A DNA stretch of 64,000 nucleotides from Ophelia neglecta (GCA_965285935.1 OZ260666.1:61690001-61754000); one strand, 5' to 3'; positions 31,301 through 52,300 are shown, counted from the first letter of the stretch. Notes: generated by a model not told the origin, from the sequence alone. Numbers and translations are program-made.

Positions 31301-34300
31301 ATTCCGTTTCCAGAGGCGCCCACCGAACCACGTGATTGTGCAATAAGTGATTATGACAAGGAGTCGGTCACACTTAAATGGAAACCACCCAAAGATGATG
31401 GAGGCAATCCCATCAAAGGTAAGTAAAATACAGGATTATGGACCATATAACATACAGTGAAACATGTGAATTAACACCACCCAAGGGACTGGCAAATGGT
31501 TATCAGATTTTGGAGGTGGTCTCTCTTTAGACAGGTTATCTAACATTGAAAGTATACATCATGGTCCTCCTATTAGTGGTCTGGATTGGCAGGTGGTCTG
31601 ATATTAGAGGTGGTCTTTAAGGCAGATTTGACTGTATGTCTCAAGAAAATTATAATCAGTCAAAATTAAACTGTAGATAGTATAGTATATTTATAGTAGT
31701 TATAAGTTTGTGGTTGGTTTCTCAGGCTATCAACTGGAGAAGAAGCCAAAGAGAGGAGGACACTGGACCAAGGCCACACCACACCTAACCAAGCCAACAG
31801 ATACCTCTGCCAAGATTGACAACCTTCTCGAGGGAGATGAGTTAGAATTTCGTGTGGTAGCTGTGAATGAAGCTGGCCCTGGCAAACCCAGCCAGTCTAC
31901 TGGACCACATCGTGTTCGTGATCCCATTTGTAAGTCTCCCCATCATTCATAATACAAACCACTTAGACAATGGAATTTAAAATTCCACAGTTTTTTTTTC
32001 CTTTTTTACCTCTTGAAATATTGCAAAATAGAATTTTGGGCCAATTTTGAGTTTCTATACAATTCCTGTTCAGTATCAGACATCTGGTAATTTTTGTTAT
32101 CTAAAATTTATAATATTGCTATTAACAGTCCAGGCAGGCCCTCCTGGCCAACCCAATCTGGATGAGGTCACCCCCAAACACATCAAGTTGTCCTGGGACA
32201 ACCCTACTGATACTGGGGGTGGAGAAATCAAGGGATATATTGTGGAGAAAAAGACCAAAGATGGAGACTGGGAGGAAGTGCCAGGAATGGTTAAAACACC
32301 CGAGGCTACCGTCCCTACTAAGGAAGGGGAGGAGTACCAGTTCAGAGTGAAGGCTGTCAACGAAGTAGGTCCTGGTAAACCTAGCCGTCCAACAGCCCCA
32401 AAAGTGGCTGAAACACAACCAGAGAAACCATCTATTGATCTGTCTGGTATTAAGGACATTGTAGTGAAAAGAGGACAGGATATAAAGATCAAATTGCCTG
32501 TAAAAGGCTTCCCAGTTCCTACTGCGACATGGAAGCATGGTGACAAGGACCTCAAGGATTCTCCAAGGACAAAGGCAGATGTGAAGCCTGATGAAGTACT
32601 CCTCACCACAACTAAGGCTGAGAGAGGAGATACTGGCAAATACACAGTCAAGCTGAGCAATGACTCAGGCACATGTGAAGGCACAGTCAATGTCACTGTC
32701 CTTGCCCCGCCTGCTGCCCCTCAAGGACCACTTGAGGCTACAGATGTTGGACCTAACCATGTCACGCTCCAATGGAAACCACCAGCGGATGACGGCGGGA
32801 GAAAGCTTGAAAAATATGTCTTGGAGAAAAAGCCAAAAGGCGCCAAAAATTGGCAGAAGGTACCTGGTATAATTCGTCCAAATGAAACTGAAGCCACAGC
32901 CAAAAATCTGGAGAAGGGTGAAGAATACGACTTCCGTGTTGTCGCTGTCAATGAGGAAGGCGAGAGTGAGCCTCTTGAAACTAAGGCTGCAATCAAAGCT
33001 AAGCATCCTTTTGGTAAGTGAAGGATTTACAAGTTATACTAATGGATCTTCATCAGCAAGCCTGTCTTATATATTCATATAAAATAGTTAACTAGTGTTT
33101 TACCTGTATTTTGTAACCCCCAGATCCTCCTGGTAAACCAGGAGAACCTGAATGTGAAGCTACCACTGTGGATTCTATCACCTTGACATGGGACAAACCT
33201 CTCAAGGATGGAGGTAAACCAATCAAGGGATACATTGTGGAGAAAAGAGAAAAGGGATCCAAGAAATGGACCAAGTAGGTTACAAGTCTGATAACATTCA
33301 ATGTGGCAAACATTATCAAACAATACAAACTCTTATTTATGACCCATATAAATAAATCAAACCACAAAGTGAAAGCAAAAACAAAATTCTATTGAGTTAA
33401 ATATATATATTGTGTTTGGAAATGCAAGTAACAAACTTGTCTGATTTCTGCCAAATGTTTATCAGCTCATGCTCAGCCTATAACACTTCCTCCCTGTCAA
33501 TTTCACCCTCCCAGCCCCATTAGATGTTGTTAAGGGGTTAAGTCACCATATTGTTGTACAGCAAGTGTTATAGGTACTAGGGTAGTGCCACTTATCCTAA
33601 ACAAATTTCCCACACCTATAAAGTTTATATACGAAATATAGTATCTGTGACCCTATGGTTGCAAAGCAACAGCCACATGATGGCCACGGTGGTATACGTA
33701 CCCTACTTTTCTTTTTTCAATAAGTGTAAATACACAAGGCATGACTTAGTGTTCACTGCTTGTAGAGCCACTCCAAGGGAGGTACCTGATGAGGAGTGTA
33801 CTGTGAAGGGGCTGATAGAAGGCAAGCCGTACGAGTTCCGTGTGGCGGCTGTCAATGATGCCGGGCCGGGTGAATGGGCCGAAGGAGAAAAAGCATTTAA
33901 ACCTGCACCACCACCTAGTATGTATTTCTGAAGCTATGCACTATATGGTTATCGATTTAGGTCTAAGTGGGAAGAACTGTGAAATAATGAGTAATGACAT
34001 TAACAAGTCTCATCTTAGTGTAATAACAAACAACAGGCAAAAAAGCCAATAATAATTGTTGTATGACTCTACATACTTTTTCCTTTCAAATCTTTTAGGT
34101 GCTCCTAAGATTGTGATGGATCCATTTGGACAAACTGTCAAGGCACATGTGGGTGAACCATTCAGAGTGAAGATCCCATTCAAGGGCAGCCCCATTCCTG
34201 ATTCAACCTGGTTCAATGTGAGCAAAAACCATTTGAATAAATAATCACACAGTTTCTCACAATGAGGCACCTTATATGTAGGGTTTTTTATCTGGTATTT

Positions 34301-37300
34301 CGGTATATCTTTTTATATTTCCAGGGAGGTAAAGAAATCACTCCAGATAGCCGTATATCTTTCGAGACAAACCCTGGTGATCCTCTTGGGGAGGTTGTGA
34401 TGGTCTGCAAATCTGCGGTGAGAGATGATGAAGGAAAATACAGCATCACCCTAAAGAACCCTAAAGGCCAGGACACCGTATCTGTCAACGTGGCGGTATT
34501 AGGTACATGATCACTTTGTTTAGTACATGGATGTGACAGTATGGCTTGTACGCTCTTATACTTACCACATTATCTGGTATCTAGTCAGTCCAAACTTCGG
34601 GGTAGGGGGTACTTATGAATCACTGTGAACATCTGTCCATCCATTCATCCTTGGTCTTGGGGTAGTACATGTACTTGTTTCTCACAGCAATATTGGATTT
34701 CTCTGAAATTTGAAGAAAATGTTGTGTAGATGTGCATAGATTTAGGAAATTATGCTTTGCCAATTTGTTCAGGTCTAAATATGGTCATTCATACTTATAA
34801 TATTTTAAAAATATTATGATGAGAATAGAATATTTAATAATTTTATGTGATTTTCATAAGTACATCACCTATCCCAATATTTGACAGATTATATTGAAAG
34901 TGGGCAGTGAAAGAACATGTCTGTTATTGGGCATGAGAAAAAGGAGTTGTGTTCCTCACGGCTTTTGAGGCCAATGACGAGTGAAATGTTGGGCATTTTT
35001 CTTTTTTGAGGGGCTCCACTCATTAAGTGGGATATGTCATTTGTTAATCTTATCATGATGTTATATTTTGTTTTGGCAGACAAGCCAGGTGTTCCTGGGG
35101 GACCTCTCGAGGCGTCTAAGGTCACACCCGAGTCTTGTAAGCTGGCCTGGCACCCACCAAAAGATGATGGAGGCTCCCCTATCAGTCACTATGTAGTAGA
35201 GAAGAAGGACAAGTCTTCTGGAAGGTGGACACCAGTCAACAAGTTCTGCCGCACTCCGGAATGTGATGTAGGAGATTTAGATGAGGGAGAAGAATATGAA
35301 TTTCGTGTGGCTGCTGTCAATGACAATGGTACAAGTGAACCACTGGTTACAGATACACCAATTACAGCCAAACATCCATTTGGTAAGACACTTTTATCAA
35401 GGTAGACAACTTCAAATCCACTGAGGGACTTATTGAAAGATGAGCATTATCCTGTGTTAATTGAGACCATTACACTTTGAATGTTCTTGATTTAAATTTA
35501 TTTATTGGATTGACCAATTGAAAATTCTTTTTATACAGACACACCCGATTCTCCGGGAACTCCTGAAATTGACGATGTTGATGAGGACTTTGTCAAGCTC
35601 TCCTGGACTAAACCTAAGAAAGATGGTGGAGATAAAATCATTGGTTATGTAGTGGAAAAGAAGGAGAAGGGTGCTAAAAAATGGACCCCAGTCAATGAAA
35701 GGTTCCCATGTAAGGACACCAAAATAGTGGTCAATGATGTCGAGCCAAACAAGGACTATGAGTTCCGAGTGAGAGCCAAGAACAGGGCTGGTCTTGGTAA
35801 ACCAAGTGAAGAGTCGAAGATGGTCACCACCAAACCAAAACCAAGTAAACAGATTTGGCACTTCAATATTATTGCTTAACACAGCATTTTGTTAAAAACA
35901 ATGCAGTGAGCTCAGATAATTACATGTACATTTTATATTGACCAGAGAAAGCTGGCATGCCTGGAACTCCAACAGTGGAAGATGTCAACAAGAACTCCGT
36001 GGACCTGGCATGGTCAAAACCTAGGAATGATGGTGGAAGTCCCATTAAAGGTATAGTTGTGACAAGGTCAACAAACCTAAAATGGCTGCTCTCAAATGCT
36101 ACATGTTTAATACATGCAGGCAATGTTTTTTTGGAATAAAGACACAAAGTATAATTGTTATTTAATCAACAGGATATCAAATAGAAAAGAAAAAGATTGG
36201 TCAAGACTGGGAGAAGGTCAATGACCGACCAATTCCTACAGAGAGTTTCACAATACCAGATCTTGAAGAGAATGAGGAATATGAATTCCGTGTAGCTGCC
36301 ATCACAGATGCTGGAGTGGGAGAAGAAAGTCTAGCTACTGCTCCAGTCAAAGTCAAGAAAAAAATACGTAAGCTAACAGTTTGCTACAGCTCTGTCAAGA
36401 AAAGAACATGTCAGCTAGCAAATATTATGTCAGATTATATCTTAAATATGGACAGTGATGAAATTTATCTTCAAGAATTTATAACTTAAAAAAACTACCT
36501 CAGAATCATATGGGACCGTCCAGGCGATGTTCATTTTCTATTGGCTACCAGGCATTTTTTATTTTATTTTATTTTTTTAAAGCTGTCACAGTGTCTGTCA
36601 CTAGCAGCAAAATCCTTTCCCTAACCATGTGGCTAAAGTGGGTGTAAAATTCCAGCCAAATATATTAACAAGCCAATTTTTCCACAACCTATATGTTTAA
36701 TACAATGTTTCTGTTTAACTTGGGAAGTTTAAATGTCAGTCGATTAAGGTTTTGGACCCCTACATATATTCTATTACTTTAAACAGCCGAAACAGTCCCA
36801 GAGTTTGACTCCAAACTTCGCAATGCCACTGCTAAGCTAGGCGATGATGCTGTTTTTGAGGTGGAACCAAATGGACATCCTAAACCCACGGTTAAATGGT
36901 AAGCAAATTTAAAACTTATAGTACCTTAACTTGCATGTTTGTTTTAAGTTTGAAAAGATATTAAATATGTCATCAGTTTACCAAGACAACCAATTGTGTA
37001 TAAAGGTACAAGGACGGAGTGCCTATCATTCCTGGTTCCAAGTACCGCATCAAGGAGGATGGAGACAAGGTTCAGCTCATTGTGAAGGATGTAGATGAGG
37101 ATGATGATGGAGAGATCACCTGTGAACTGGTGAACTCCAAGGGACGTGATGAGAGCAAAGCCAAACTCAAAGTCCAAAGTAAGTTTCAATAAAGCAAAAC
37201 TTAAAATAACGAAATGTACAATCTCTTGCAGCTAAGTTTTCTAACTTTGCAGCCTTCACACCTCTCTGTGACCACTCAGACTATAAACGCCTTAATGTTT

Positions 37301-40300
37301 GTTACAGAGCCACCAGAAGAGCCTAAAGATGTGGTCATTGCTGACTTTGACAAGGGCTCTGTCACACTCAAGTGGAAACATCCCACAGATGATGGAGGCT
37401 CTCCAATCACAGGTGGGTTCAAAGTTCATCAAGAATTGGTTCTATAAATAATGATTTGTGATAAAATTTAAGCAATCTCACTTTTGTGTTTTCATATCAT
37501 GACTTTGCTTGACCTTACCAGGATACCAACTGGAAAAGAAGCCTGCCAGAGGAGGCTCCTGGCAAAAGGCTAGCCCAAAACTAATAGATCCCAGCAAATC
37601 AACTGGAAAGATCGAGGGTCTGACAGAGGGAGACAACTTGGAGTTCCGTGTGGTGCCTGTTAATGATGTAGGACCTGGTAAACCTAGCAAGTCCACAGGG
37701 CCACACAAAGTCAGGGACCCAGTCCGTGAGTAGTTTGTACCCCTTCACAGTCAAATCACTTGGTATATACTACTCAACATCCGTCTGGCATATTAATGTA
37801 ACACAATATGGTATGTTTTAGATTCAGCTGGATCTCCTGGTCAACCTAAGTTGGATGAGATCACCCCCAACCACATCAAGCTGTCCTGGGACAAACCCAT
37901 TGAAGATGGAGGAGCACCAATTGAGGGTTACATTGTAGAGAAAAAGACCAAAGACGGAGACTGGGAGGACGTTCCCGGAATGGTGAAGGGTAATGATGTC
38001 AGTGTACCTGTCAAGGAAGGGGAGGAGTACCAGTTCAGGGTGAAGGCTGTCAACTCTGCAGGGGAAGGAAACCCCAGCAGACCTACAGCCCCTGTCAAGG
38101 CTGAGAAACAGCCAGAGAAACCCTCCATCGATCTATCAGGTATCAAGGACATTACTGTGAAGGCAGGACAGGATATCAAAATAGCTCTGCCTATTAAAGG
38201 GTTCCCAACTCCGAAGGCTGTGTGGAAAAAGGATGATGACGATGTGCAGGACTCCCTGAGAACTTCAACTGATGTAAAAAAAATTTGCAATGTCATCGAA
38301 AATTTGAAATTCCGTATGGTATCATACCGTTATTGATTCAGTTTATAGTATTGGCTTAATAGTTGATAGAAATATCTGGATAACATCAAAAAAAGCAAAA
38401 GTGACAAGCAGAGTTAACTCTGGGCTATTTCAAATTGTTAGTGACAGATCTTGTGTTATAAAACTAACACTTTAAACCAAAGAAGTTAACAATTTATTTG
38501 CTTAAGTACTAGGAGAAATCTCAGAAGCTGGAGTAAGTAGATAATCAAGACAAAATTAATGAGACAACTATATATCATCTCCTGTAACTTACTGGCTCAT
38601 CAGTACTTTCTTATAAACTAACCATTGTGTTTATTAAATAGGTTAAACCAGATCAAGTTACCCTGACCACATCCAAAGCCAAACGGGGAGACACTGGAAA
38701 GTACAAGGTACGTCTTACCAACGATTCTGGAACAGTGGAGGCTGAAGTCAATGTTATTGTACTGGACAAACCTGCCTCCCCAGGAGGTCCTTTGGAACCA
38801 GTGAAAGTTAGTCCAAATGCTATCACGGTTGCTTGGAAACCCCCCAAGGATGATGGTGGTGCTAAGATTGACAAATATGTCTTGGAGAAGAAGCCCAAGG
38901 GAGCAAAAAGATGGCAAAAAGTACCTGGACATATAGGTCCGAATGACACAGAAGCAACAGCTGGTAATCTGGAAAAGGGAGAGGAATATGACTTCCGTGT
39001 GATGGCCGTAAACGAGAATGGAGAGAGTGAGCCCCTGGAGACAGAGGAAGCCATCAAGGCTAAGCACCCTTTTGGTAAGTGTGATATGCATATTAGAGTG
39101 TACTGCTGGTTATTGTGCAAACAGAGTCCCACAATACCTCAATATATAAGGTATCAAATAAAAATGATTTTTTATTGAGGCATGAATTAATGTTAACATT
39201 GTAGATCCTCCTGGAAAGCCTGGAGAACCAGAATGTGCTGGAACAACTCCAGATTCTATTACATTGACCTGGGATAAACCTCTGAAGGATGGTGGCAAAC
39301 CCATTACTGGTTATGTTGTAGAGAAAAGAGAGAAGGGTTCCAAGAGATGGACAAAGTAAGCAAACCGATAATGGAACATTTCTGCAATGTCATGCTCATC
39401 ATTTGAAATAAAGAATATATTATGTTTTTCTGTTTTTCTCATAAGAGCTGTACATGGAGAAGTACCTGATGAGGAGTGTACTGTGAAGGGACTGATAGAA
39501 GGCAAGCCGTATGAGTTCCGTGTGGCCGCTGTCAATGAGGCCGGACCAGGTGAATGGGCTGAGGCAGATAAGCCATTCACCCCAGCAAAACCTCCAAGTA
39601 AGAAACACTACTTTACTCATCTTCCATATTAAAGAGACTCAATATTAAAATTTATTTAAAAATAAAGGAAACAGCAGTATGCTTTATTATCTTTTATTGC
39701 AGTAGTTCCATCTAATATTTCTTTTTGTTTCAAGGTGCTCCAAAAGTTGTCCTAGATCCATTTGGTAACGACATTAAGGTCAATGCTGGAGAACCATTTA
39801 GAGTTAAAATCCCTTTCAAGGGAAGTCCACTACCTGAGTCCACTTGGTTCAATGTAAGCTATTATGTTTTATCTTGCGCTCAATATGTAAATCAGAGTTT
39901 GCTATAGGATTTGTTTGTGCATTTTCCCAAAAGTATTTAAGAATACCCCCTGTATTTTACAGGAGGGTACAGAAATTAAGCCAGATGATCGTATCAGTTT
40001 TGATACTGTTGCTGGTGATCCCCTTGGTGAGGTGACAATGATCTGTAAATCAGCAAAGAAAGATGACCAAGGAAAATACACAATAACACTAAAGAACCCA
40101 AAAGGATCAGACACCGTTGCTGTTAAAGTAACAGTCATAGGTAGGTTGAAAATATCTCAACATGCCCTTATATATATTTTATGAGAGTCGCTATACATGT
40201 ATTCAGTCTACAATAGTTAACATACCAAAGGTGTAAACTATATATTTACCTTGATACAGACAAGCCAGGAGTGCCTGGTGGCCCTCTGGAGGCGTCCAAC

Positions 40301-43300
40301 ATCAGGCCAGACTCCTTAAAACTAGCGTGGAACCCACCTAAAGATGATGGAGGCTCCCCCGTAAGCCATTATGTAGTAGAGAAGAAGGACAAGTCTTCTG
40401 GCAGGTGGACTCCTGTCAGTAAGTTCTGTCGTCATCCAGAGTGCGACGTGGGAGACCTGGATGAAGGAGAGGACTACGAGTTCCGGGTGTCTGCTGTTAA
40501 TGACAATGGTCAGAGTGAGCCTCTGACTACAACAGGGCCCATCACAGCTAAATATCCTTTTGGTAGGCCTTTATTTACCCAGTTCAATCTGAGTTTGATA
40601 CAAAATATATAAATCTTTCTCCAACCAAGGTGTGGGGCAAAAGTTATAGTTTCCCATAATTCAGAAAAAAATGAAGTATGAATAAATGAAAAGTAATATA
40701 TATTTCTTGGCATTCCTTCTTTAAAACAATCTGAAACTGGTTTCTATGCCGCAATCATAATGAGTCTACTGTGGTCCTTTTTGTAATAGATGTAAATTTG
40801 GTCCTTTCATAGATACTCCCGGATCTCCTGGAGCTCCGGAAATTGATGATGTTGATGAGGACTTTGTCAAACTGTCCTGGACCAAGCCTAGGAAGGATGG
40901 AGGAGACCCTGTCACTGGTTATGTTATAGAGATGAAGGAGGTAGGAGAGAAAAAATGGAAGCCAGTGAATTCCAGGTTTCCTTGCCGAGACACCAAGATG
41001 GTGGTTGGTGATGTCGAGCCAAACAAGGACTACGAGTTCCGTGTCAAGGCTGTAAACAGAGCAGGTCAAGGTTCACCCAGTGATGAGTCGAAGGTGGTCA
41101 CCACTAAACCAAAGCCAAGTTAGTGTTTATACACAAGCTAGATTTAGCTAAATATGTTATTGAGCAGCTGATGTCAATGCTGATAGATAAAAAGACAGAT
41201 AAGGTGTAATATATGTACTTGCTAGTTTGAATAAATTGCACATTGCAGAGAAAGCTGGAATGCCCAGTACACCAAGGGTTGATGATGTGGGTAAAAACAA
41301 TGTTGCCCTGTCATGGGACAAACCAAAAGATGATGGTGGAAGCCCAATAAAAGGTATGATCTCTTTTAAATTGGAAAAGATATGGTGGTTCTGATTTCGT
41401 GTGAATGTATATATTTATGACTATGATCTTATTGAGATGGTTTTGTCAACATTCCCATTTAATTTTCCTAGGATACCAAGTAGAGAAGAAAAAGCCAGGT
41501 GGTGGCTGGGAGAAAGTCAATGACCGTCCAATTCCAGGGGAGAGTTTCACAGTGCCGGATTTAGATGAGGGTGAGGAATATGAATTCCGAGTGGCTGCTG
41601 TCACAGATGCTGGTACCGGAGACCCAAGCTTTGCTACCGCTCCGGTCAAAGTCAAGCAAAAAATACGTGAGCAAATCATATTGTACCCTACAGCAAAGAC
41701 ATTTATTTTAGTAAGCTTCATTTTCATAAATTTCCAATGCAGATCTACCAATATTCCATGATCCTTTTCACTTACAAACAGCTGAGACAGTACCTGAGTT
41801 CAACGCGAAACCTCGTAATGCCACTGCCAAGTTGGGAGAAGACGCAGTGTTTGAGGTAGAGCCAAATGGACATCCCAAGCCAGAAGTCAAGTGGTAAGTA
41901 GTTCTTATTTGAGAATGGTCAGAAGTACTAAAAGTGTGCAGGTAATGCGGGCTACAGTGTGAACATAACACGTTTTCAGTTTACGTGAACAAACTACAAA
42001 TGGACCCAGTAAACTGGCATTGATGCAACATAAACCTAACTGGCTGATTTATGTAGAAAGATGTATAACTTTCTAATTCTTAAAGTATATTAAAGAGCTG
42101 AGGAGGTACATGTATTTATCATTACAATTGACCCAACATGCAATACCATTCGCCATCTGGTGGGCATCGCAGAACTAAGGTTTTGGACTTCCTGGTCGAC
42201 CACTTTTCGCGAGTTACTGCGCAGCCTGCCGCGCAGTTTAAACAGGTGTAGCTTTCTCAGGGCTGACACCGCTCATGGCCTGACAGGCTGTCCCCAGTTA
42301 TTCCACGCGAAGTATTTGGGATCTCCGATGGCAACTCCTCGATAATTGTTCAATTGTTCTGGGTCAAAGTATCTTGAACACAGTGTAGATCTTTTGTTTA
42401 TATTTAATTTGTCCACGATCATGCTGTTTTCCTTCAACGATTTGCCTTCTCTTCGTACCAGGCGCCGCCATCTTGCCACGGCCGCCGGGTCGTCTCGGGG
42501 CCATTTAACCCAAGATATTTCTGCCATCCAAGGATACTTGTCCAGATGGTTAATTTTTCTGCTATGCGAGAAGCACTCTGCTGCCTCGCAGATAAAAACC
42601 ATCTAATGATCTTCCTTTCATTCGTTTGTAACCTCAAAATAACGTTAGACCGCGACGATCTCAGCAGACCATGTAAGACGCCATGCAATGTTTATGAGAG
42701 CTTGGGTACGCCTACTGTTTTGGTCGACTTTTTTCCGCAATGCATTGCGCGATCGTAGTTCTGCGATGCCCACCAGATGGCGAATTGTATTGCAGGTTGG
42801 GTGAATAGGAAGCCTTGTAGTTTTGTACTGCTCACCATATAGTTATTTCTCAACAGGTACAAGGATGGAGTGCCTATCATTCCTGGTGCCAAGTACCGCA
42901 TCAAGGAGGATGGAGACAAGGTTCAGCTCATTGTGAAGGATGTAGATGAGGATGATGATGGAGAGATCACCTGTGAACTGGTCAACTCCAAGGGACGCGA
43001 TGAGACCAAGGCAAAACTCAAAGTCCAAAGTAAGTTTCAATAAAGTGTTGAAAATGCATGCCACCTAAATTAAAAGGAAAGTAGATATGAATCAGTGGAA
43101 TGACCCCTGAAGAAGTCAAAGCAAGGGACACCTGAGAACTTGATAGCCTAGGCCTTCTAACCATGCTGTTGACGGTTGTATCTCAATTTTGCTCAAGGCT
43201 GTAGCTGAGATGTCAAATCTGTCAACTTGGTGTGACGCACCCACCACCCTCCCCCTGCCCAAATACCCTACCACTTCCTTTCAGCCTTCTACTGCTACCC

Positions 43301-46300
43301 CCCCCCCCATTCCTCCCTCCTACTTACAAATGTAAATAACAGCTGTCAGCTGAACCAGTGCAGACATCCCACTATCCCCGTCACTTGAACTCACCCTTCC
43401 CCAGGTTAACTTCGATAATGAAATACAAAATAGTTTTTAGTACTTGTACACACCTCCAACTACCCTATTATGCCCCTTACCCACAACTAGCTCTCCCCTC
43501 ATATCAATCCCATCATCCCCCCCCCCCCCCCCCAATGCCTTCGGTTCCCTCTAGCCACTCCTATCATGGCTGAGCAGTGTCTAGACCTGAGTGGGAATTA
43601 CAAGGTTAGCCAGAGTCATCACAGCCGAGAGGAAGGTTAATTTGCTGATCTGGAGAATATTATTAAGTGAACTTGTGCTTTTTGGGTTGACAGTATGATA
43701 AAGGCATGGCAAGGAAAACCATAAGTGATCTTAGCCTTTGTGCTCCCAGTATTCTACTTAACTCTTACTTCTATAAATATTAACTAGGTGACATTGCCTT
43801 GGGAGATATCAATTCTCAAGAGTCAGGTAGTTGTTGCTTATATAAGGCATTCATCCTTGTCAGTCGCGGACACACTGTTATGTTAGCTTCTGCACCAGTA
43901 TGTTTATGAGCTTCAGTGTCCAACGCAATGAGTGTATGTGGCAGTCTTGAGAAATTCTTCAGAAGCCATGATTAAGGGCATGAGTATAAATTAAAAATGT
44001 GAAATGGGTTAGACTTTTATGACTACTCAAACAAATATAATTGCAAGAATATATAAAATATTGATGCCAGAGAATCCTAGGTATTGATAATGCTGCGGGT
44101 TGTGAGCATTCTTCTCACCTTCTTATATTTTACAGAGCCTCCAGAAGAGCCTAAAGATGTGGTCATTGCTGACTTTGACAAGGGCTCTGTCACACTCAAG
44201 TGGAAACATCCCACAGATGATGGAGGCTCTCCAATCACAGGTGGGTTCAAAGTTCATCAAGAATTGGTTCTCTTAATAATGATTTGTGATAAATATTTGA
44301 GAAGCCTAGGTTTTATGTATGTCATATCTTGACTTTGCTTGACCTTACCAGGATACCAACTGGAAAAGAAGCCTGCCAGAGGAGGCTCCTGGCAAAAGGC
44401 TAGCCCAAAACTGATAGATCCCAGCAAATCAACTGGAAAGATTGAGGGTCTGACAGAGGGAGACAACTTGGAGTTCCGTGTGGTGCCTGTTAATGATGTA
44501 GGACCCGGTAAACCTAGCAAGTCCACAGGGCCACACAAAGTCAGGGACCCAGTCCGTGAGTAGTTTGTACCCCTTCACAGTCAAATAACTTGGAATATAC
44601 TACTAAACATCCGTCTGGCATATTAATGGAACACAATATGGTATGTTTTAGATTCAGCTGGATCTCCTGGTCAACCTAAGTTGGATGAGATCACCCCAAA
44701 CCACATCAAGCTGTCCTGGGACAAACCCATTGAAGATGGAGGAGCACCAATTGAGGGTTACATTGTAGAGAAAAAGACCAAAGACGGAGACTGGGAGGAC
44801 GTTCCCGGAATGGTGAAGGGTAATGATGTCAGTGTACCTGTCAAGGAAGGGGAGGAGTACCAGTTCAGGGTGAAGGCTGTCAACTCTGCAGGGGAAGGAA
44901 ACCCCAGCAGACCTACAGCCCCTGTCAAGGCTGAGAAACAGCCAGAGAAACCCTCCATGGACCTATCAGGTATCAAGGACATCAAAGTCAGAGCCGGACA
45001 GGATATCAAAATAGCAATCCCAATAAAGGGCTATCCAACACCAAAGGCCGCTTGGAAACATGATGACGATGATGTCAAGGACTCTCCGAGAACTTCCACT
45101 GAGGTCTGTTCACCACTTCTTTCTTAACTAAATACTTGCAATGTGTTCACACTTAAAGTGCAAACTAAGCTATATTTTATCCTGCAGGTGAAGCCAGACA
45201 AAGTGTTGCTGACCACGACTAAGGCAAAGAGGGGCGACACTGGAAAGTATAAAGTGCGCCTTACCAATGATTCTGGCACAATTGAGGGTGAAGTCAATGT
45301 TATTGTACTGGACAAACCTGGGTCCCCAGGAGGTCCTTTGGAACCAGTGAAAGTTAGTCCAAATGCTATCACGGTTGCTTGGAAACCCCCCAAGGATGAT
45401 GGTGGTGCCAAGATTGACAAATATGTCTTGGAGAAGAAGCCTAAAGGGGCCAAGAGATGGCAAAAAGTGCCAGGGCACATTGGTCCAAATGACACAGAAG
45501 CAACGGCTGGTAATCTGGATGAAGGTGAAGACTACGACTTCCGTGTGATGGCTGTGAACGAGCATGGAGAGAGTGAGCCTCTGGAGACAGAAAATAGCAT
45601 CAGGGCTAAACATCCATTTGGTGAGTAAATACCCCACAGAGGAGTAAACAGTTTTAAGACTTTCTTTGTAGTGCTTGAAGGAAAAGAAGAAATGATGAGC
45701 CACCTTTGTTAATCACTTATAAGGGAGATTTTGCCAGATTTTCCTCTCTTGTGATTAGTTAGCATGATTTTAGGTATTTCAATAGATGAATAACCCCAAT
45801 CTCTCCCTAGAATGTAGCAAATGTATTGTACACTCATAAGAGGCCATGTAAAGAGAGGGCTGACCATAACATTGTACCATAATAGTAGTAAGAATACTAA
45901 TCATCAAAACTATAATCTCCAAAGTAGATCCTCTCTATCTATATTTCTTGTTTCTTTGCTGACTGGTCATGCTATGTCTGTATGAGACATTATGATACCT
46001 GGGACTGAGGTGGACTTGTTGATACACCTTCACTTCTCATGCCCAAGGTCCACTGGCCAATCCTCAGCGTGGTACTTAAGGTCGTTTTAAGACTTGCACC
46101 ACAGGTTGGTAACACACGCCCCTTGAAGAAAAGAGTGTATGTGTAGTATGTAGTATGCAGGGAGAGTCAAACCCTGACATGCTAAAAACCTCAAAGGGGC
46201 AACCCCAACGCCCTGGCTCCCAGATTTAACAAGATGTGTTGACTATGCCACAGTCCCAGCTCCAACAAGTGTGATGAAATAAAATTAATATTTCTTGGGG

Positions 46301-49300
46301 TATTGTGGTAGTATTATAGACATGATTTTTGAGAATGGATGGACAGCAGGGCATACTAATTGCATCATGATGGCCATCTTTTTGGTTGAAAAATTATCTC
46401 CGCCACGAAAAAATATTGACCAACACACTGTGGTTGGCCGTCTTGTTTTTGCAACTGAAAATTTGGATGGCATGATTTGACCTTCAAGCAGAAGTCAATG
46501 TCAAGTTGGTAGCCATAAAAAGGTTCCCTGTACATGACTTGCTATTAGTTTTGTACCCATCAAAAACCTCTCTGTATATCACATCATATAAGTGGTCAAC
46601 ACATTTTATATGCCTATCTTGCACCATTAAGCCAGATGAGCTGGACGGACCGACAGAGAAATGAGCAAAAAAGTATCATGACTGAATGCATTACCATCCT
46701 TGATGTTGGCACTCTTAGGGGCAAGTCAAGTTAGATAACCATATCTGAAATTGTTTTTGTTAAATCCACCAGACAAGTGGGACAGAAGGACGGACCAACC
46801 CTAAACTACAATGTAATAGCCCCCATTCATCTCTATGAGTGGCAGGGGACTAAAAAGTGCTCAGCCTAATAAGCAACACCACTGAGGTCCACCTTGATGC
46901 ATGCAACATATAAGGGTACTCTTATATTGGATTTAAAATAATGTCCATATTGCAAATGATATGGTATCTCTAATAATGCAATACACTGATAGTTAAATTT
47001 GCTTTTTTGTCAGATAAATGATTAACTCCTTTTATGTAGATCCTCCTGGAAAACCAGGAGAACCAGAGTGTGAGGGAACTACGCCAGACTCCATCACCTT
47101 GAAATGGGACAAACCCAGAAAAGATGGCGGAAAGCCCGTCAAGGGATACATTGTAGAAAAGAGGGAGAAAGGCACCCGTAGGTGGACCAAGTAAGGCTGA
47201 CAGGTTTTAACTGTCCACAGTTTGCTTAAGGAAGTCAGCATTCTAGCTTTGTACGCAGTGATACTTTATGTGAAGTTGAATAAGTTGCCTCAACTACTTG
47301 TAAAAAGTAAATAAGTTTAGTATTCTGACCTATATAGTTTTATTTGATTAGAGCTGTACCTGGAGAAGTACCTGATGAGGAGTGTACTGTGAAGGGGCTG
47401 ATAGAGGGCAGGCCGTATGAGTTCCGTGTGGCTGCTGTCAATGATGCCGGGCCGGGTGAATGGGCCGAGGGAGAAAAGGCTTTCACACCTGCTGCTCCAG
47501 CAAGTCAGTAAACAAAATTATTTAATTATTTTCTTCTTCAGTAATTTACATTTAAACAAGAAGAATTAACTGCAATAAACATAAACATTAACAACCGTTT
47601 CTTTCTTTTTTAGGTGCCCCAAAAGCTGTGATGGACCCATTTGGACAAGACATCAAGGTCAATGCCGGAGAGCCATTTAGAGTCAAAATTCCCTTCAAAG
47701 GCAGTCCACTACCAGAGTCCACATGGTTAAATGTGAGCAGATTAGACGAGTCTTTATCATTTTTTTAAGCCTTGAATGAAACACCTGAGGTCTATCAAAT
47801 GAACCGGAGTTATTTAATTTTCTCTCTTACAGGAGGGCAAAGAAATTTTCCCAGATAGCCGCATCAGCTTTGAAACCAACCCCGGTGTACCGCTTGGAGA
47901 AGTTGTAATGATCTGTAAATCTGCCAAAAAAGATGACCAGGGCAGGTATAGCATCACACTGAAAAATCCCAAAGGCTCTGACACTGTCAGTGTCAATGTC
48001 ACAGTACTAGGTAAGACCAAAGGGGTTTGCTCTTTCTGAACAATCATTTAAACCAACAATAAGATAGGAACATTCCACAATATCCAATTTTCATTTTTAT
48101 TGGTGTGGATATTTTTTATTTTAGATTGGTACATACTTTTCCCTTTGCAGACAAGCCAGGAGCCCCCGAGGGACCTCTTACGGCGTCGGATGTCACCCCC
48201 GAGAGCCTGACACTGTCCTGGAAGCCTCCTGCAGACACTGGCGGCTCTCCCATCAGCCACTATACAGTAGAGAAGAAGGACAGGTCTGGCAACTGGACTC
48301 CAGTCAGCAAGTTCTGTCGCCAACCCAAGTACGAGGTTGGTGGCCTAGATGATGGTGAAAAATATGATTTCCGAGTGTGTGCAGTCAACGAGCAGGGAAA
48401 GAGTGAACCTCTCACAACTACCAAACCTATCACAGCCAAATATGACTTTGGTAGGTGTAACTAATAATTACTATTTACATAATTGTTGTCACTCAACATA
48501 GGCTTCCTGGCACAATTTTTTCCCTGTGTAATCCCTCCTTTACATTGTCCACCACAGACACCCCTGATGCACCTGGTCAGCCTTCCATTGATGATGTAGA
48601 CGAGGACTCTGTGACATTGTCCTGGACCAAGCCTCGCAGTGACGGAGGGGACAAGATCAAGGGGTATGTGGTAGAAGTCAAGGAGAAGGGTGGAAAGTGG
48701 AAACCCATCAATGACAGATTCCCATGCAAGGACACAAAAATGACTGGTATGGTATCATTGGGGTACTTTCAGTGTTAGCTAGTGTGTTGCAGATAATAAA
48801 TTATTGAATGACACTTTAATTATATAGATAAGCAGCAGTAAAGTATTCTCATATATATCTAAAATTCAAAGAGATGTTTTCCCCTTCAGTTGGTGACCTC
48901 GACAGGGGCACAGAATATCAGTTCAGAGTTCGTGCCAAGAACCGTGCTGGCAATGGAGAACCCAGTGATTCTTCAGATGCTGTCACTCCCAAGCCAAAAG
49001 CCAGTAAGTCATTATATGACCAAAGCACAATTGATATCTTTTCCTCCTACATTAATTACATCTTTGTTATTTTATGGATACAATTCATATATCTACTTGT
49101 TTCCCAATACAGAGAAAGCAGGCATGCCTGGTGTACCAAATGTGGACCGTGTAGACAGGAACAGTGTAGACCTGAGCTGGACTAAGCCCAGGAACGATGG
49201 TGGTAGTCCAATCAAGGGTTATCAGGTCCAGAAGAGGAAGCCAGGAGGAGACTGGGAGAAGGTCAATGAGCGCCCCGTATTGGGAGAAAACTTTACTGTT

Positions 49301-52300
49301 CCCGACCTAGATACAGGAGACGAATATGAATTCCGCGTGGCCGCCATCACTGATGCCGGAGTTGGAGATCCTAGCTTCGCCACCGCTCCTGTCAGGGTGG
49401 AGGACAAGAAAGGTTACAACTTCTACAACCAGAAACTATAATATTTAGTTAAAAAACAACTTAAGACCAGGTTAAATTAGGCCTACTACATATAGTATTC
49501 ATGTGTGTAATGATGTGACTGTATTTCAGCTCTCAAGAAGCCTGAATTCCTCAAAAAGCCAGAAAACACTTCAGTCCCAGTAGGAGGTGATGCTGTGTTT
49601 GAGATTGAGGCATTTGGCTTTCCCACCCCTACTGTTAACTGGTACGAACTCATCTTATTAATGTAAAATGATATCTTTAAATATGAAAAAGTAGAACAAA
49701 TGGCTTTGGCCTGTTGAATGTGTTAAATTATGTCATATAAATAAGGGATATGATATATTGTGATTTGCATTTGCAGGTACAAGGATGGTATTCCCATTTC
49801 CCCTGGTGCCAAATACAGAGTGAAAGTGGATGGGGACAAGGTACAGTTGACTGTGAAGGATGTCAGTCCAGGAGATGCTGGTGATGTCACATGTGAACTT
49901 GTCAATCCAAAAGGAAAAGAGACAGCTACAGCTAAAATGGGAGTCATAAGTGAGCCTCATTAAATACACCAGTCCATCTGAATCTATGTCATCCCTTAAT
50001 GAATTATGCCATTACCTCGATATAGAAAAAATGTTTATAACATGAACGTTCCTCTCTTTCAGAGCCACCATCATTTGATGGTATCGTTGGTGATCAGAGT
50101 GTAGACAAGGGAGATACACTGAAACTGAAGATCCCCATTAGTGGAGATGGACCATTCAACTTCAAGGTGAAGAAAGACAACAAAGAGATCCCCTTAGAGG
50201 GAGGCAGGATCAAATTCATGCCGTTTGATGACTACATTGTGTTCCAGATTCCAAGTAAGTCACACTGATTATGATTATTTTATGAATAATTTATAATGAC
50301 ACTAATCCCACTGGAAACATTCATTAGACAATAGCAACCCGTCTGGTGACTTTCACTTGACAACACCAACCCCTCTGGTGGCATTCATTAGATAACACCA
50401 ACCTCTCTGGTGACATTCATTAGATAACACCAACCTCTCTGGTGACATTCATTAGATAACACCAACCTCTCTGGTGACATTCACTAGATAACACCAATCC
50501 ATCTGGTGACATTCACTACATAACACCAACCTTTCAGGTGACATTCAGTAGATAACACCAACCCATCTGGTGACATTCACTTCATAACACCAACCTTTCT
50601 GGTGACATTCATTAGATAACACCTACCTCTCATTACCTAGACAACAGCGACCCCTCTACTAGCATTCATTAGACAACATCAACCCCTTATTGACATTCAT
50701 AAGACAAACCCCTGTGGTGACCATCATTAGCCAACACCAACCCCTCAGTCGACACTCACTAGATAACACCAACCCCTCTGGTGGCATTCACTAGACAACC
50801 CCAACCCCTCTGGTGGCATTCACTAGACAACCCCAACCCCTCTGGTGGCATTCACTAGACAACACCAACCCCTCAGGTGACATTCATCAGTCATCACCAA
50901 CCCCTTTGGTGACATTCATTATACAATACCAACACCCCAGTTGCCATTCACTAGTCATGTCCAATGTATCTGGTGATATTAATTAGGCATTTCGTGACAT
51001 TCATTAGACAAAACTAACCCCTGACATTTTGACATTCTATCTGGAAAGTACCATCGCAATCTTGTCCTCAATGATGTTACAATAGTTTTCCCTTTATCAT
51101 TGAAATAAAACCCCATACTCAACAACTATCTTCCGCTGTAAGACAGTCCTCTCAATCATTACACCCTTTCAGATGCTGATCCCGCTGACTCCGGTAAATA
51201 TAAAATTGAAGTGTCCAATGACAGTGGCACAACAGGCTGTGACTTTGGAGTTTCCGTCAAATGTAAGTTACAATATATGTAACCACTAGCTTCATGTAAA
51301 CATTGCAATTCATTAGTCATGTAGCATAGAATAAAAGAATAAAGATCTGATGGTTTGAAATCAAGTCCTATATGAGATGAGTCCAGATTGGTCTGATCTC
51401 TTGCAGCGCCCCCTGGTAAGTGCAGAGGACCTCTAGATGTGTCTGACATCTTCAAGAACTCCTGTAAACTGCGCTGGAAGCCACCAGAGGATGACGGTGG
51501 TTCCAGAGTCCAGAGCTACGTGGTAGAGAGAAGGGAGAAGGGCAAGCCCTGGTGGACCACTGTGTCATCCTTCTGTAAGGTAAACACAGTAATCTTCTAT
51601 TGCGAGGATAAAACTTCCATCATTGGTTGATAAGATGCCTTTTACAGACTAATACAGGTAATCAACATCAGTTGAGCTTAGCCTGATCCAACACATAGTT
51701 CAGTATTTGTGAATCATTGGCTGTCTAACAAGCAGTAAACTTGTTTTAATGTTGTGATGATTCAGGACCCAGAGTGTGATGTACAAGGCCTGTATGAGAA
51801 CAAGGAGTATGAGTTCAGAGTGGCCGCCACCAATGCTAACGGCACTGGCGACTGGCTAGAGATGGATAACTCTATTGTGGCAAAAATGCCATTTGGTAAG
51901 TTCTGTGAAAATGTGTATTTCAAAGGAAATTATAAAATAAAGTGCAAAGCAGTCAAAACTCCTCAGCCATATATTGTTAATGCATTTGATGCACCTGACC
52001 TTGAGACTGAGTTTAAAGTCAAATAAATGATAAAAGTAGATTCCCTGCATATTTGACTTATCTCACTGTCATTGTTCAGCCACAAGGAGGCATTGAACAT
52101 TTGGTGTTCTCTACATGACTTATGATAAAAGAGGTTATTATTTTCACATTTTCGTGCATCTGTCATTTTATCACTAGTAAATATTTTTGATGTACACTGT
52201 GAAAACAGCATTGAGGTATCATGACACACAATCAAAGTTAATAGGATGACCTCGTTAATAGGTCAAACTCCAAAAGTCCTGTAAAGGCAGTTAAAGTGTA

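What the first reader, a model, noticed from the sequence alone, without database searches (positions are those of the whole stretch)
31314..49949. Triplicated 10-domain super-repeat lengthens twitchin by ~2000 aa
Seen: three colinear copies of Fn2-Ig-Fn2-Ig-Fn3-Ig (2988, 2988 and 2982 coding nt) with matching exon sizes and no frameshifts or stops, giving 29 FN3 domains in total. Removing two copies leaves (IgFn2)2-Ig-Fn3-Ig-Fn2-Ig-Fn3-Ig2-Fn2-Ig2-Fn-kinase with 15 FN3, which is the mussel twitchin arrangement as I recall it. Inference: a lineage-specific, titin-like super-repeat expansion. At roughly 4 nm per domain, ten domains span about 40-45 nm, close to the 43-nm myosin helical repeat that titin's 11-domain C-zone repeat matches.
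Basis: partly seen in the sequence, partly recalled or inferred. Interest (0 to 1): 0.78.

Follow-up and report, generated by a model that had tools for sequence, protein, structure and literature searches.

The report
Annelid twitchin with tripled ten-domain block
A worm's gene for the giant muscle protein twitchin carries three tandem copies of a ten-domain block where molluscs and several other worms have one; blocks of the same length were multiplied separately in at least two, probably three, animal lineages, which hints (unproven) that this length fits the muscle's thick filament.

Summary
On the + strand lie three colinear units: A 31314-37178, B 37308-43029 and C 44136-49949. They hold 2988, 2988 and 2982 coding nt, every intron is GT-AG, and there are no stops. 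Each unit encodes Fn-Fn-Ig-Fn-Fn-Ig-Fn-Fn-Fn-Ig, and the window holds 29 Fn3 before a twitchin-type kinase. The single-unit, 15-Fn3 layout is shared by all sampled molluscs (Mytilus included), nemerteans, a brachiopod, a bryozoan, rotifers and the annelids Owenia and Paralvinella, so the expansion is derived. It arose in two steps. An old duplication (A, C) is shared with one distant relative, an ENA metagenome contig with two units. Later an unequal crossover made B, which has a C-like head and an A-like tail. Recent gene conversion followed. All units are under purifying selection (dN/dS 0.06-0.14). New here: clitellate annelids and parasitic flatworms multiplied a block of the same length, ten domains, but with borders shifted by one domain (F0-F7, no Ig between copies). 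That makes at least two, probably three, separate origins. No RNA data were available, so joint inclusion of the units in one mRNA and the 43-nm fit remain inferences. Other first-stage notes on this same stretch proposed the chimera and the intron differences; both hold.

The parts
31314..37178 (+). Unit A: Fn1 Fn2 Ig1 Fn3 Fn4 Ig2 Fn5 Fn6 Fn7 Ig3; 13 exons, 2988 nt. Exons: 31314-31418, 31726-31929, 32129-33013, 33124-33274, 33766-33917, 34099-34217, 34325-34502, 35080-35382, 35539-35844, 35946-36050, 36173-36367, 36787-36898, 37006-37178.
   Evidence: Orthologous to unit 1 of the ENA contig by the tail tree and by shared intron positions.
37308..43029 (+). Unit B, a chimera with a C-like head and an A-like tail; 14 exons, 2988 nt. 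Exons: 37308-37412, 37522-37725, 37822-38273, 38642-39074, 39205-39355, 39446-39597, 39735-39853, 39963-40140, 40260-40562, 40813-41118, 41249-41353, 41472-41666, 41782-41893, 42857-43029.
   Evidence: In the head tree B groups with C (100); in the tail tree B groups with A (98). dS profile. Outside the window, unit B's DNA matches nothing else in the genome apart from the transposon in its intron.
44136..49949 (+). Unit C; 14 exons, 2982 nt. Exons: 44136-44240, 44352-44555, 44652-45103, 45188-45620, 47040-47190, 47352-47503, 47614-47732, 47833-48010, 48151-48450, 48558-48746, 48890-49003, 49113-49412, 49530-49641, 49777-49949.
   Evidence: Orthologous to unit 2 of the ENA contig: both have the split Fn6 and the unsplit Fn7, and they group in the trees.
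21905..31188 (+). Upstream part of the thick-filament rod: Fn Fn Ig, Fn Fn Ig, Fn (a1 a2 aI b1 b2 bI F0). F0 (30894-31154) is the domain that clitellates and flatworms include in their repeated block and this gene does not.
51163..55666 (+). Conserved module before the kinase: Ig, Fn Fn, Ig Ig, Fn (I4 G1 G2 I5 I6 G3).
56179..58262 (+). Protein kinase exons (Pkinase profile positions 9-189 seen in three exons).
   Evidence: These three exons average 78% identity to Paralvinella and 67-72% to molluscan twitchins.
37302..38275 (+). Recent gene-conversion tract between B and C (partner 44130-45105): 94% nt identity over 976 nt, introns included. Coding dS is 0.04 over codons 1-200.
   Evidence: Short-read unitigs show about double depth here.
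42855..43045 (+). Recent conversion tract between the last Ig exon of B and that of A (partner 37004-37194): 96% nt identity.
39597..40260 (+). Approximate crossover zone in B (Ig2 exons, codons about 500-600), where similarity switches from C-like to A-like.
   Evidence: Also the intron pattern: the Ig1 intron is C-like and the Fn6/Fn7 introns are A-like.
42125..42806 (.). Short transposon with inverted ends of about 50 nt, inside the intron that splits Ig3 of unit B. That intron is 963 nt, against 107 nt in A and 135 nt in C.
   Evidence: at least 40 copies genome-wide at 80-96% identity. Depth of about 1200-1400 in the unitigs.

Best explanation
This is the twitchin gene (the thick-filament-bound member of the titin family, with a kinase) of an annelid. 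Its thick-filament-binding rod holds three tandem copies of a ten-domain block, Fn2-Ig-Fn2-Ig-Fn3-Ig, about 995 aa each. The ancestral spiralian gene has one.

History (shown): the block F1..I3, bounded by phase-1 introns, was duplicated in an ancestor shared with at least one other distant annelid, giving units A and C. Later, in the window's lineage, misaligned units C and A crossed over inside or near the second Ig. This produced A-B-C, where B has a C head and an A tail. Gene conversion has since homogenised the first ~1 kb of B and C and the last Ig exon of A and B. All three units stay under strong purifying selection.

Function (inferred): all three units are spliced into one mRNA, adding about 1,990 aa and 20 domains, or roughly 80-87 nm of extended chain. 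In-register positions are far more alike than out-of-register ones, so each position probably contacts a fixed feature of the myosin/paramyosin filament, as in titin's C-zone. The protein can therefore only be lengthened in whole blocks. Clitellates and parasitic flatworms independently multiplied a block of the same length with different borders, which supports a ten-domain quantum, about three myosin crowns.
For: Gene identity. Pfam finds fn3, I-set and Pkinase on the exons. The layout Ig Fn2 Ig2 Fn kinase Ig is identical to that of annotated twitchins. The three kinase exons are 78% identical to Paralvinella and 67-72% to molluscs.

Units. Amino-acid identity is A-B 78%, B-C 81% and A-C 72%.

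Ancestral state. The 15-Fn3 single-unit layout is found in 30 proteins from molluscs, nemerteans, Lingula, Watersipora, rotifers, Owenia and Paralvinella and in acanthocephalans.

Relative with two units. ENA contig ERZ25069296 ctg20925.

Trees. The window and contig units form a clade (100) that excludes Paralvinella's unit and the clitellate units. In the head, B groups with C (100), joined by ctg2 (94). In the tail, A groups with B (98), joined by ctg1 (96), and C groups with ctg2 (89). AU tests reject a duplication shared with clitellates (p 0.011) and an A+ctg1 clade that excludes B (p 0.003).

Divergence. B-C dS is 0.04 (codons 1-200), 0.83 (201-500) and 2.4 (501-996). A-B dS is 1.17 (601-900). 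A-C dS is 1.9. dN/dS is 0.06-0.14 throughout.

Shifted block elsewhere. Labelling domains against Paralvinella gives F0..F7 repeated in Helobdella, two JGI contigs with uninterrupted ORFs, Schistosoma and Echinococcus.

Position-specific conservation. Identity is 59-64% in register and 37-40% out of register.

Co-inclusion elsewhere. The 2-unit and 3-unit clitellate-like forms lie as single uninterrupted ORFs on intronless JGI contigs.

Assembly. Outside the window, unit B's DNA matches nothing else in the genome apart from the transposon. Unitig depth is single over the B-specific part and about double over the head shared by B and C.
Against: No RNA run of this organism was available. Joint inclusion of A, B and C in one transcript is therefore untested. 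Because every unit border is phase 1, skipping a unit would stay in frame.

The only reads were short-read unitigs from one sample, probably the assembly's own. Long-range contiguity of A-B-C rests on the assembly.

Only one relative with the same unit borders was found, and it is distant: 59-87% identity in single-copy parts. How far the two-unit and three-unit states spread among annelids is unknown.

Gene conversion is active here and can distort trees.

The AU hypotheses were framed after the tree had been seen.

The 43-nm fit is not measured. At titin's 3.9 nm per domain the block would span about 39 nm.
Confidence: 0.75

Rival explanations
1. The three units are alternative cassettes, optional or mutually exclusive. 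Most isoforms would then keep the ancestral 15-Fn3 length and differ only in which unit they carry. On this reading the tandem copies diversify the protein and do not lengthen it.
For: Every unit begins and ends in phase 1, so any unit can be skipped in frame. The units have diverged to 72-81% amino-acid identity while staying under selection, which could reflect specialisation. Molluscan and insect twitchin/projectin records list many isoforms (names). No RNA data exist for this organism.
Against: In clitellate-like relatives the 2-unit and 3-unit forms occur as single uninterrupted ORFs on intronless contigs (L004, L008). The Schistosoma and Helobdella models also join all units. Nothing in the searches made here gave a precedent for mutually exclusive use of 13-14-exon, 6-kb cassettes. 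The A-B intron is an ordinary 129-nt GT-AG intron.
Confidence: 0.18
2. Three or more units are ancestral for annelids or Spiralia, and single-unit species lost copies by unequal crossover. The window would then simply keep an old state.
For: Unequal crossover removes tandem units as easily as it adds them, and it restores a clean single-unit layout. Multi-unit forms exist in two annelid lineages and in flatworms. Gene conversion can make old paralogues look young.
Against: It needs eight or more separate reversions to exactly one unit across phyla. The window block (F1..I3) and the clitellate/flatworm block (F0..F7) have different borders and cannot be turned into each other by crossover between units. 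Units cluster by lineage with support of 100, and single-unit Paralvinella and Macrostomum sit beside the multi-unit clades. The AU test rejects a shared duplication (p 0.011). B is younger than the split from the two-unit relative.
Confidence: 0.04
3. Unit B is an assembly artefact, such as a false join or a haplotype duplication, and the true gene has two units like the relative.
For: B's head is 94-100% like C's head and its last exon is 96% like A's, which is the kind of similarity that can confuse assemblers. The only reads come from one sample.
Against: The middle 3.5 kb of B differs from both A and C by 20-35% in nucleotides, with dS 0.8-1.2, far beyond allelic divergence. B-specific unitigs are present at single-copy depth in all three runs, and the head shared by B and C sits at about twice that depth. 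The unique 129-nt A-B intron is covered. There is no second copy elsewhere in the 762-Mb assembly.
Confidence: 0.03

Closest known systems
Molluscan twitchin (Mytilus galloprovincialis, Funabara et al. 2003 as cited in PMC12040844; Mytilus edulis twitchin-like X18, P0457)
   Same: Same gene family and probably the orthologue. The layout is identical outside the extra units: Ig array, FFI FFI FFFI FFI FFFI, Ig, Fn2, Ig2, Fn, kinase, Ig. The kinase exons are 71% identical and the block is 49% identical in register.
   Different: It has one ten-domain block and 15 Fn3, against three blocks and 29 Fn3 here. It has five Ig after the kinase, against two seen in annelids.
Vertebrate titin A-band super-repeats (D-zone 7 domains x6, C-zone 11 domains x11; PMC10665226)
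   Same: Tandem multi-domain Ig/Fn3 blocks with position-specific conservation. The Fn2-Ig and Fn3-Ig sub-modules are the same building blocks.
   Different: The block here has 10 domains (Fn2-Ig-Fn2-Ig-Fn3-Ig) and titin's have 11 or 7. There are three copies here, against 11 (C-zone) or 6 (D-zone) in titin. It arose inside annelids, independently of titin's repeats. No ruler role is known for twitchin.
C. elegans twitchin (P0401) and arthropod projectin/twitchin (for example P0003, P0321)
   Same: Twitchins lengthened to 31-39 Fn3, with the same module around the kinase.
   Different: They were lengthened by many copies of the three-domain Fn-Fn-Ig unit (10-14 of them) and not by a ten-domain block.
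Clitellate and neodermatan flatworm twitchins (Helobdella HELRODRAFT_191869 P0352; JGI contigs P0345 and P0416; Schistosoma mansoni P0427; Echinococcus P0490)
   Same: Two or three tandem copies of a ten-domain, roughly 1000-aa block covering the same nine core domains. In Helobdella and JGI1 the middle copy is also a last-head/first-tail chimera.
   Different: Their block runs F0..F7, giving six Fn3 in a row and no Ig between copies. Here it runs F1..I3. Their units form separate clades. Clitellates also carry an extra Fn-Fn-Ig upstream.

Membership tests
Twitchin / projectin (thick-filament titin-family kinase) | Array of I-set Ig and Fn3 domains in an Fn-Fn-Ig / Fn-Fn-Fn-Ig pattern | tested here: met
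   Pfam fn3 and I-set on the exons; HMM domain map of the window.
Twitchin / projectin (thick-filament titin-family kinase) | Conserved module Ig-Ig-Fn-Fn-Ig-Ig-Fn-kinase-Ig near the C-terminus | tested here: met
   Window map 49553-61032. The same string occurs in more than 60 annotated twitchins.
Twitchin / projectin (thick-filament titin-family kinase) | Ser/Thr kinase domain closest to twitchin kinases | tested here: met
   Pkinase hits on three exons. Identity is 78% to Paralvinella, 67-72% to molluscan twitchins and about 40% to vertebrate titin kinase. Catalytic residues were not inspected.
Twitchin / projectin (thick-filament titin-family kinase) | Orthology of the rod: colinear, in-register match to annotated twitchins | tested here: met
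   Each unit aligns end to end with the F1..I3 region of 26 twitchins at 36-64% identity, and the tree broadly follows phyla.
Twitchin / projectin (thick-filament titin-family kinase) | Location on the thick filament; PKA-regulated D1/D2 sites (molluscan catch function) | not tested
   No protein or RNA data. The D1 cassette note (s1-745812) was not examined.
Titin-type A-band super-repeat | Tandem copies of a multi-domain block, in register | tested here: met
   Three colinear units of 995, 995 and 993 aa.
Titin-type A-band super-repeat | Equivalent positions more alike than different positions | tested here: met
   Identity is 72-81% between units in register. Against relatives it is 59-64% in register and 37-40% out of register.
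Titin-type A-band super-repeat | Block composition Ig-Fn2-Ig-Fn3 (7 domains) or Ig-Fn2-Ig-Fn3-Ig-Fn3 (11 domains) | tested here: not met
   The block is Fn2-Ig-Fn2-Ig-Fn3-Ig, ten domains. Titin's composition is given in PMC10665226.
Titin-type A-band super-repeat | Common descent with titin's super-repeat copies | tested here: not met
   The copies arose within annelids from a single ancestral block.
Titin-type A-band super-repeat | Block length equals the filament's ~43-nm repeat | not testable with these tools
   Arithmetic only: 39 nm at titin's 3.9 nm per domain, and 43 nm would need 4.3 nm per domain.

The most novel reading that the evidence does not exclude
Ten domains is the unit in which spiralian twitchin can be lengthened. 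A block of exactly ten domains was multiplied separately in the window's annelid lineage (F1..I3), in clitellates (F0..F7) and in neodermatan flatworms (F0..F7). In three cases a third copy was made by the same unequal crossover between two existing copies. Breakpoints differ but length is the same. This would mean that the thick filament imposes a register of about three myosin crowns on twitchin binding, as it does for titin's C-zone, and that species tune the footprint of each twitchin molecule in whole-repeat steps.
Probability: 0.3. Interest if true: 0.75.

Novelty: new variant of a known kind. Interest (0 to 1): 0.55.

Why it matters
Titin's 11-domain super-repeat is the textbook case of a protein whose internal period matches a filament. 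Twitchin and projectin are usually described as simple Fn-Fn-Ig arrays. Here a ten-domain block behaves as a copy-number unit in the spiralian twitchins sampled. There are one, two or three copies in different lineages, at least two kinds of breakpoint, and repeated gain of a third copy by the same crossover. That is a set of natural length variants of one thick-filament protein. If block number tracks thick-filament geometry, for example in obliquely striated or paramyosin-rich muscles, the variants offer a direct test of whether invertebrate A-band titins read the myosin repeat. They also make a clean case study of exon-block duplication, unequal crossover and gene conversion inside one gene. 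On its own, without expression or structural data, the window's gene is a well-documented but modest evolutionary variant.

Tried and rejected
1. The search of protein representatives with the 329-aa exon. Whole-protein scores add up over the many Fn/Ig domains, so long titins and arthropod forms filled the top 150 and no close relative appeared. It was useful only as a source of long proteins.

2. The search for homologous proteins with crinoid P0007, region 3400-4640. Again dominated by long arthropod and nematode forms. The kinase-only region of P0345 gave the spiralian set.

3. The search for related loci with the single exon found nothing. The alignment version found only clitellate-like or single-unit contigs, none with an I3>F1 junction.

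Its contig was reached as L008 through.

5. RNA evidence: no RNA run is listed. Read laying gave only short unitigs from one sample, so neither splicing nor long-range contiguity could be tested. A 'skips 942' joint (39529>40472, side 20) was set aside as a match between paralogous Fn3 sequences.

6. The careful IQ-TREE search did not finish in 300 s, so quick trees (SH-aLRT only) were used.

7. L002 (ERZ26859052) was considered as a second relative of the window type. It was rejected because its pattern F I FFI FFI FFFI FF also fits the clitellate upstream region, and the contig is too short to decide.

8. Considered and rejected: that the six Fn3 in a row in Helobdella, JGI and Schistosoma were missed Ig domains. 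The domains abut with 13-15-residue linkers, and the extra one labels as F0.

Searches used single exons by reference or database proteins. Joined units were used only in local scripts for alignment, dS and trees.


Full report
WHAT IS THERE

The window carries most of a large + strand gene. Its exons give Pfam fn3 and I-set hits across 15-61 kb and Pkinase hits at 56179-58262. Fn3 and Ig profile HMMs were built from those exons and run on all stop-free segments. The resulting domain order is: at least five Ig; Fn Fn Ig; Fn Fn Ig; Fn; three times (Fn Fn Ig Fn Fn Ig Fn Fn Fn Ig); Ig; Fn Fn; Ig Ig; Fn; kinase; Ig Ig. That makes 29 Fn3.

blastn of the region against itself shows three colinear genomic copies. 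Most of their length is 67-78% identical. Patches reach 94-96%.

Exon models were derived from reading frame, GT-AG sites and domain continuity.
- Unit A: 31314-37178, 13 exons, 2988 nt.
- Unit B: 37308-43029, 14 exons, 2988 nt.
- Unit C: 44136-49949, 14 exons, 2982 nt.

All introns are GT-AG, there are no stops, and all unit borders are in phase 1. The one correction is that exon sizes match only after three intron presence/absence differences. The Ig1 intron is in B and C only. The Fn6 intron is in C only. The Fn7 intron is in A and B only.

WHAT GENE AND WHAT ORGANISM

The string Ig Fn2 Ig2 Fn kinase Ig, preceded by FFI/FFFI modules, is that of annotated twitchins. The three kinase exons are 78% identical to a Paralvinella palmiformis protein (an annelid). 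They are 67-72% identical to molluscan twitchins, 60-65% to ecdysozoan twitchin/projectin and about 40% to vertebrate titin.

In a tree of the block, the window's units sit in a clade with support 100 together with Paralvinella and Helobdella. Owenia, nemerteans and molluscs lie outside. This agrees with earlier agents' guess that the genome is an annelid's. The assembly has 762 Mb in 223 contigs, and the window is C9:61,690,001-61,754,000.

IS THE EXPANSION DERIVED?

Architectures were computed with the same HMMs for about 70 twitchin-family proteins fetched.

The layout FFI FFI FFFI FFI FFFI Ig FF IgIg F kinase, with 15 Fn3, is found in:
- every mollusc sampled (Octopus, nine gastropods and bivalves including Mytilus edulis);
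- two nemerteans, Lingula and Watersipora;
- rotifers and acanthocephalans;
- the annelids Owenia and Paralvinella.

A review gives 24 Ig + 15 Fn3 for the cloned M. galloprovincialis twitchin (PMC12040844).

Echinoderms and hemichordates have 18 Fn3. Nematodes, tardigrades and arthropods have 27-39 Fn3, reached through many Fn-Fn-Ig triplets.

A RELATIVE WITH TWO UNITS

The exon search led to an ENA metagenome contig, ERZ25069296 ctg20925 (L001 + L003). It carries the same gene with the same unit borders but only two units, of 2991 and 2988 nt. It is a distant relative: single-copy parts are 59-87% identical to the window, only a little closer than Paralvinella.

Intron positions pair its unit 1 with A, since both have an unsplit Ig1 and a split Fn7. 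They pair its unit 2 with C, since both have a split Ig1, a split Fn6 and an unsplit Fn7.

HOW B AROSE

The identity and synonymous-divergence profiles show a mosaic.
- B against C: dS 0.04 (codons 1-200), 0.83 (201-500) and 2.4 (501-996).
- B against A: dS 1.7 (1-500), 1.17 (601-900) and 0.64 (901-996).
- A against C, and each against its orthologue in the contig: dS 1.9-2.2, which is saturated.

Segment trees agree. In the head, B groups with C (100) and then with contig unit 2 (94). In the tail, A groups with B (98) and then with contig unit 1 (96), and C groups with contig unit 2 (89). An AU test rejects an A + contig-unit-1 clade that excludes B (p 0.003). Note that this hypothesis was framed after the tree had been seen.

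B's introns are C-like in the head and A-like in the tail. This is the product expected from an unequal crossover between a misaligned C and A in a two-unit gene. The exchange point lies near the second Ig, at about 39.6-40.3 kb. The crossover happened after the split from the contig's lineage.

The near-identity of the first ~1 kb of B and C extends through introns (94% over 976 nt). The last Ig exon of A and B is also nearly identical (96%). Both are younger than the rest of the mosaic and are best read as later gene conversion.

dN/dS is 0.06-0.14 in every comparison, so all three units have been kept as coding sequence.

TEN-DOMAIN BLOCKS ELSEWHERE

The following proteins show six Fn3 in a row and an exact period of about 1000 aa:
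- Helobdella robusta (P0352);
- two JGI contigs with uninterrupted ORFs (P0345 on L008, P0416 on L004);
- Schistosoma, Echinococcus and Paragonimus.

Each window unit aligns at 59-64% identity to two or three places in the clitellate-like proteins, and at 41-45% to two or three places in the flatworm proteins. Every domain was then labelled by its best match among Paralvinella's domains. The repeated block in these proteins is F0 F1 F2 I1 F3 F4 I2 F5 F6 F7, and Ig3 appears only after the last copy. In the window and the ENA contig the block is F1 .. F7 I3. Both blocks have ten domains, but their borders differ by one domain.

In the tree, the clitellate-like units form their own clade (100). 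The neodermatan flatworm units form another, with the single unit of Macrostomum as its neighbour. An AU test rejects a duplication shared between the window's lineage and clitellates (p 0.011).

A JGI contig with the clitellate-type extra FFI has only one unit (L007). Genomic contigs L017 and L036 show the F7>F0 junction. No contig shows I3>F1.

The middle units of JGI1 and Helobdella are also chimeras with the head of the last unit and the tail of the first. The step from two to three units by unequal crossover therefore seems to have recurred.

Two origins within annelids are robust, because the borders differ. A third origin in flatworms rests on the tree and on parsimony.

ASSEMBLY AND EXPRESSION

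Outside the window, unit B's DNA matches nothing else in the genome, apart from a short transposon in its Ig3 intron.

Only three runs hold the stretch. All come from one sample, none is RNA, and they are kept as short unitigs. When laid on 36301-42300, B-specific sequence is present at single-copy depth (about 27-37 in X1). The head shared by B and C sits at about 52. The unique A-B intron is covered. This fits the assembly but does not prove long-range order, and splicing could not be tested.

FUNCTION (INFERRED)

In molluscs twitchin lies on the thick filament (PMC12040844). In C. elegans it decorates the whole myosin filament and is too short to act as a ruler (PMC12063666).

Two extra units add about 1,990 aa and 20 domains. 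Identity is much higher in register than out of register, which argues for position-specific contacts like those of titin's C-zone.

Titin's 11-domain unit spans about 43 nm (PMC10665226), or 3.9 nm per domain. At that figure ten domains give about 39 nm, and 43 nm would need 4.3 nm per domain.

The argument for a structural quantum rests on the same length recurring with different borders. If breakpoints fell at random on the borders of the 23 rod domains, about 5% of possible blocks would be ten domains long (my estimate).

LITERATURE

Searches on twitchin with super-repeat, annelid, lophotrochozoa and Fn3 found general statements on A-band titins and a titin family overview. None describes ten-domain block multiplication in spiralian twitchins. 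Subscription papers are not covered, so novelty is provisional.

PROCEDURE NOTE

Joined units were used only in local scripts.

Noticed in passing
window 42125-42806: A short element of about 680 nt with inverted ends of about 50 nt sits in the intron that splits Ig3 of unit B. At least 40 copies are scattered over the genome at 80-96% identity, so it is a young non-autonomous transposon family. Another first-stage note calls it a THAP mini-transposon; the THAP part was not checked.
   Followed up: partly
window 50299-50954: A tandem array of a 32-nt unit, about 21 copies with 79% matches, lies in the 1.2-kb intron that follows unit C.
   Followed up: partly
G000:C9:31,963,700-31,966,000 (L045 about 3538-5669, minus strand): A dispersed partial copy of twitchin unit exons lies 30 Mb away on the same chromosome. 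It holds pieces labelled Ig3, Ig1, Fn3, Fn4 and Fn7. It is 77% identical in nucleotides to exon 4 of unit B, and the frame shifts inside Fn3. It is probably a decayed fragment and not a second gene.
   Followed up: partly
window 45621-47039 and 43030-44135: The 1419-nt intron of unit C, where A has 110 nt and B has 130 nt, contains fragments of old dispersed repeats at 70-89% identity to many loci. The 1106-nt intron between B and C, where the A-B intron has 129 nt, is unique in the genome.
   Followed up: yes
L004, L008, P0352 (clitellate-like twitchins): The middle units of the three-unit clitellate-like proteins are also chimeras with the head of the last unit and the tail of the first. These proteins carry an extra Fn-Fn-Ig upstream. 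Unit number runs from 1 (L007) through 2 (P0416) to 3 (P0345, Helobdella).
   Followed up: partly
P0353 (Owenia 'Titin', 6412 aa) and P0356 (Elysia marginata 'titin', 7507 aa): Different giant proteins: (Fn3 x3, Ig x2) repeated about ten times and followed by long Fn3-only runs. In Elysia there are about 45 Fn3 in a row before Ig-Ig-Fn-kinase. These were not examined further.
   Followed up: no
window 36301-36889: Unitigs of run X2 differ from the assembly here by 9 substitutions and a 7-nt insertion, and run X1 has no unitig at 97% identity or above. This is probably a second haplotype of the A-unit intron.
   Followed up: no
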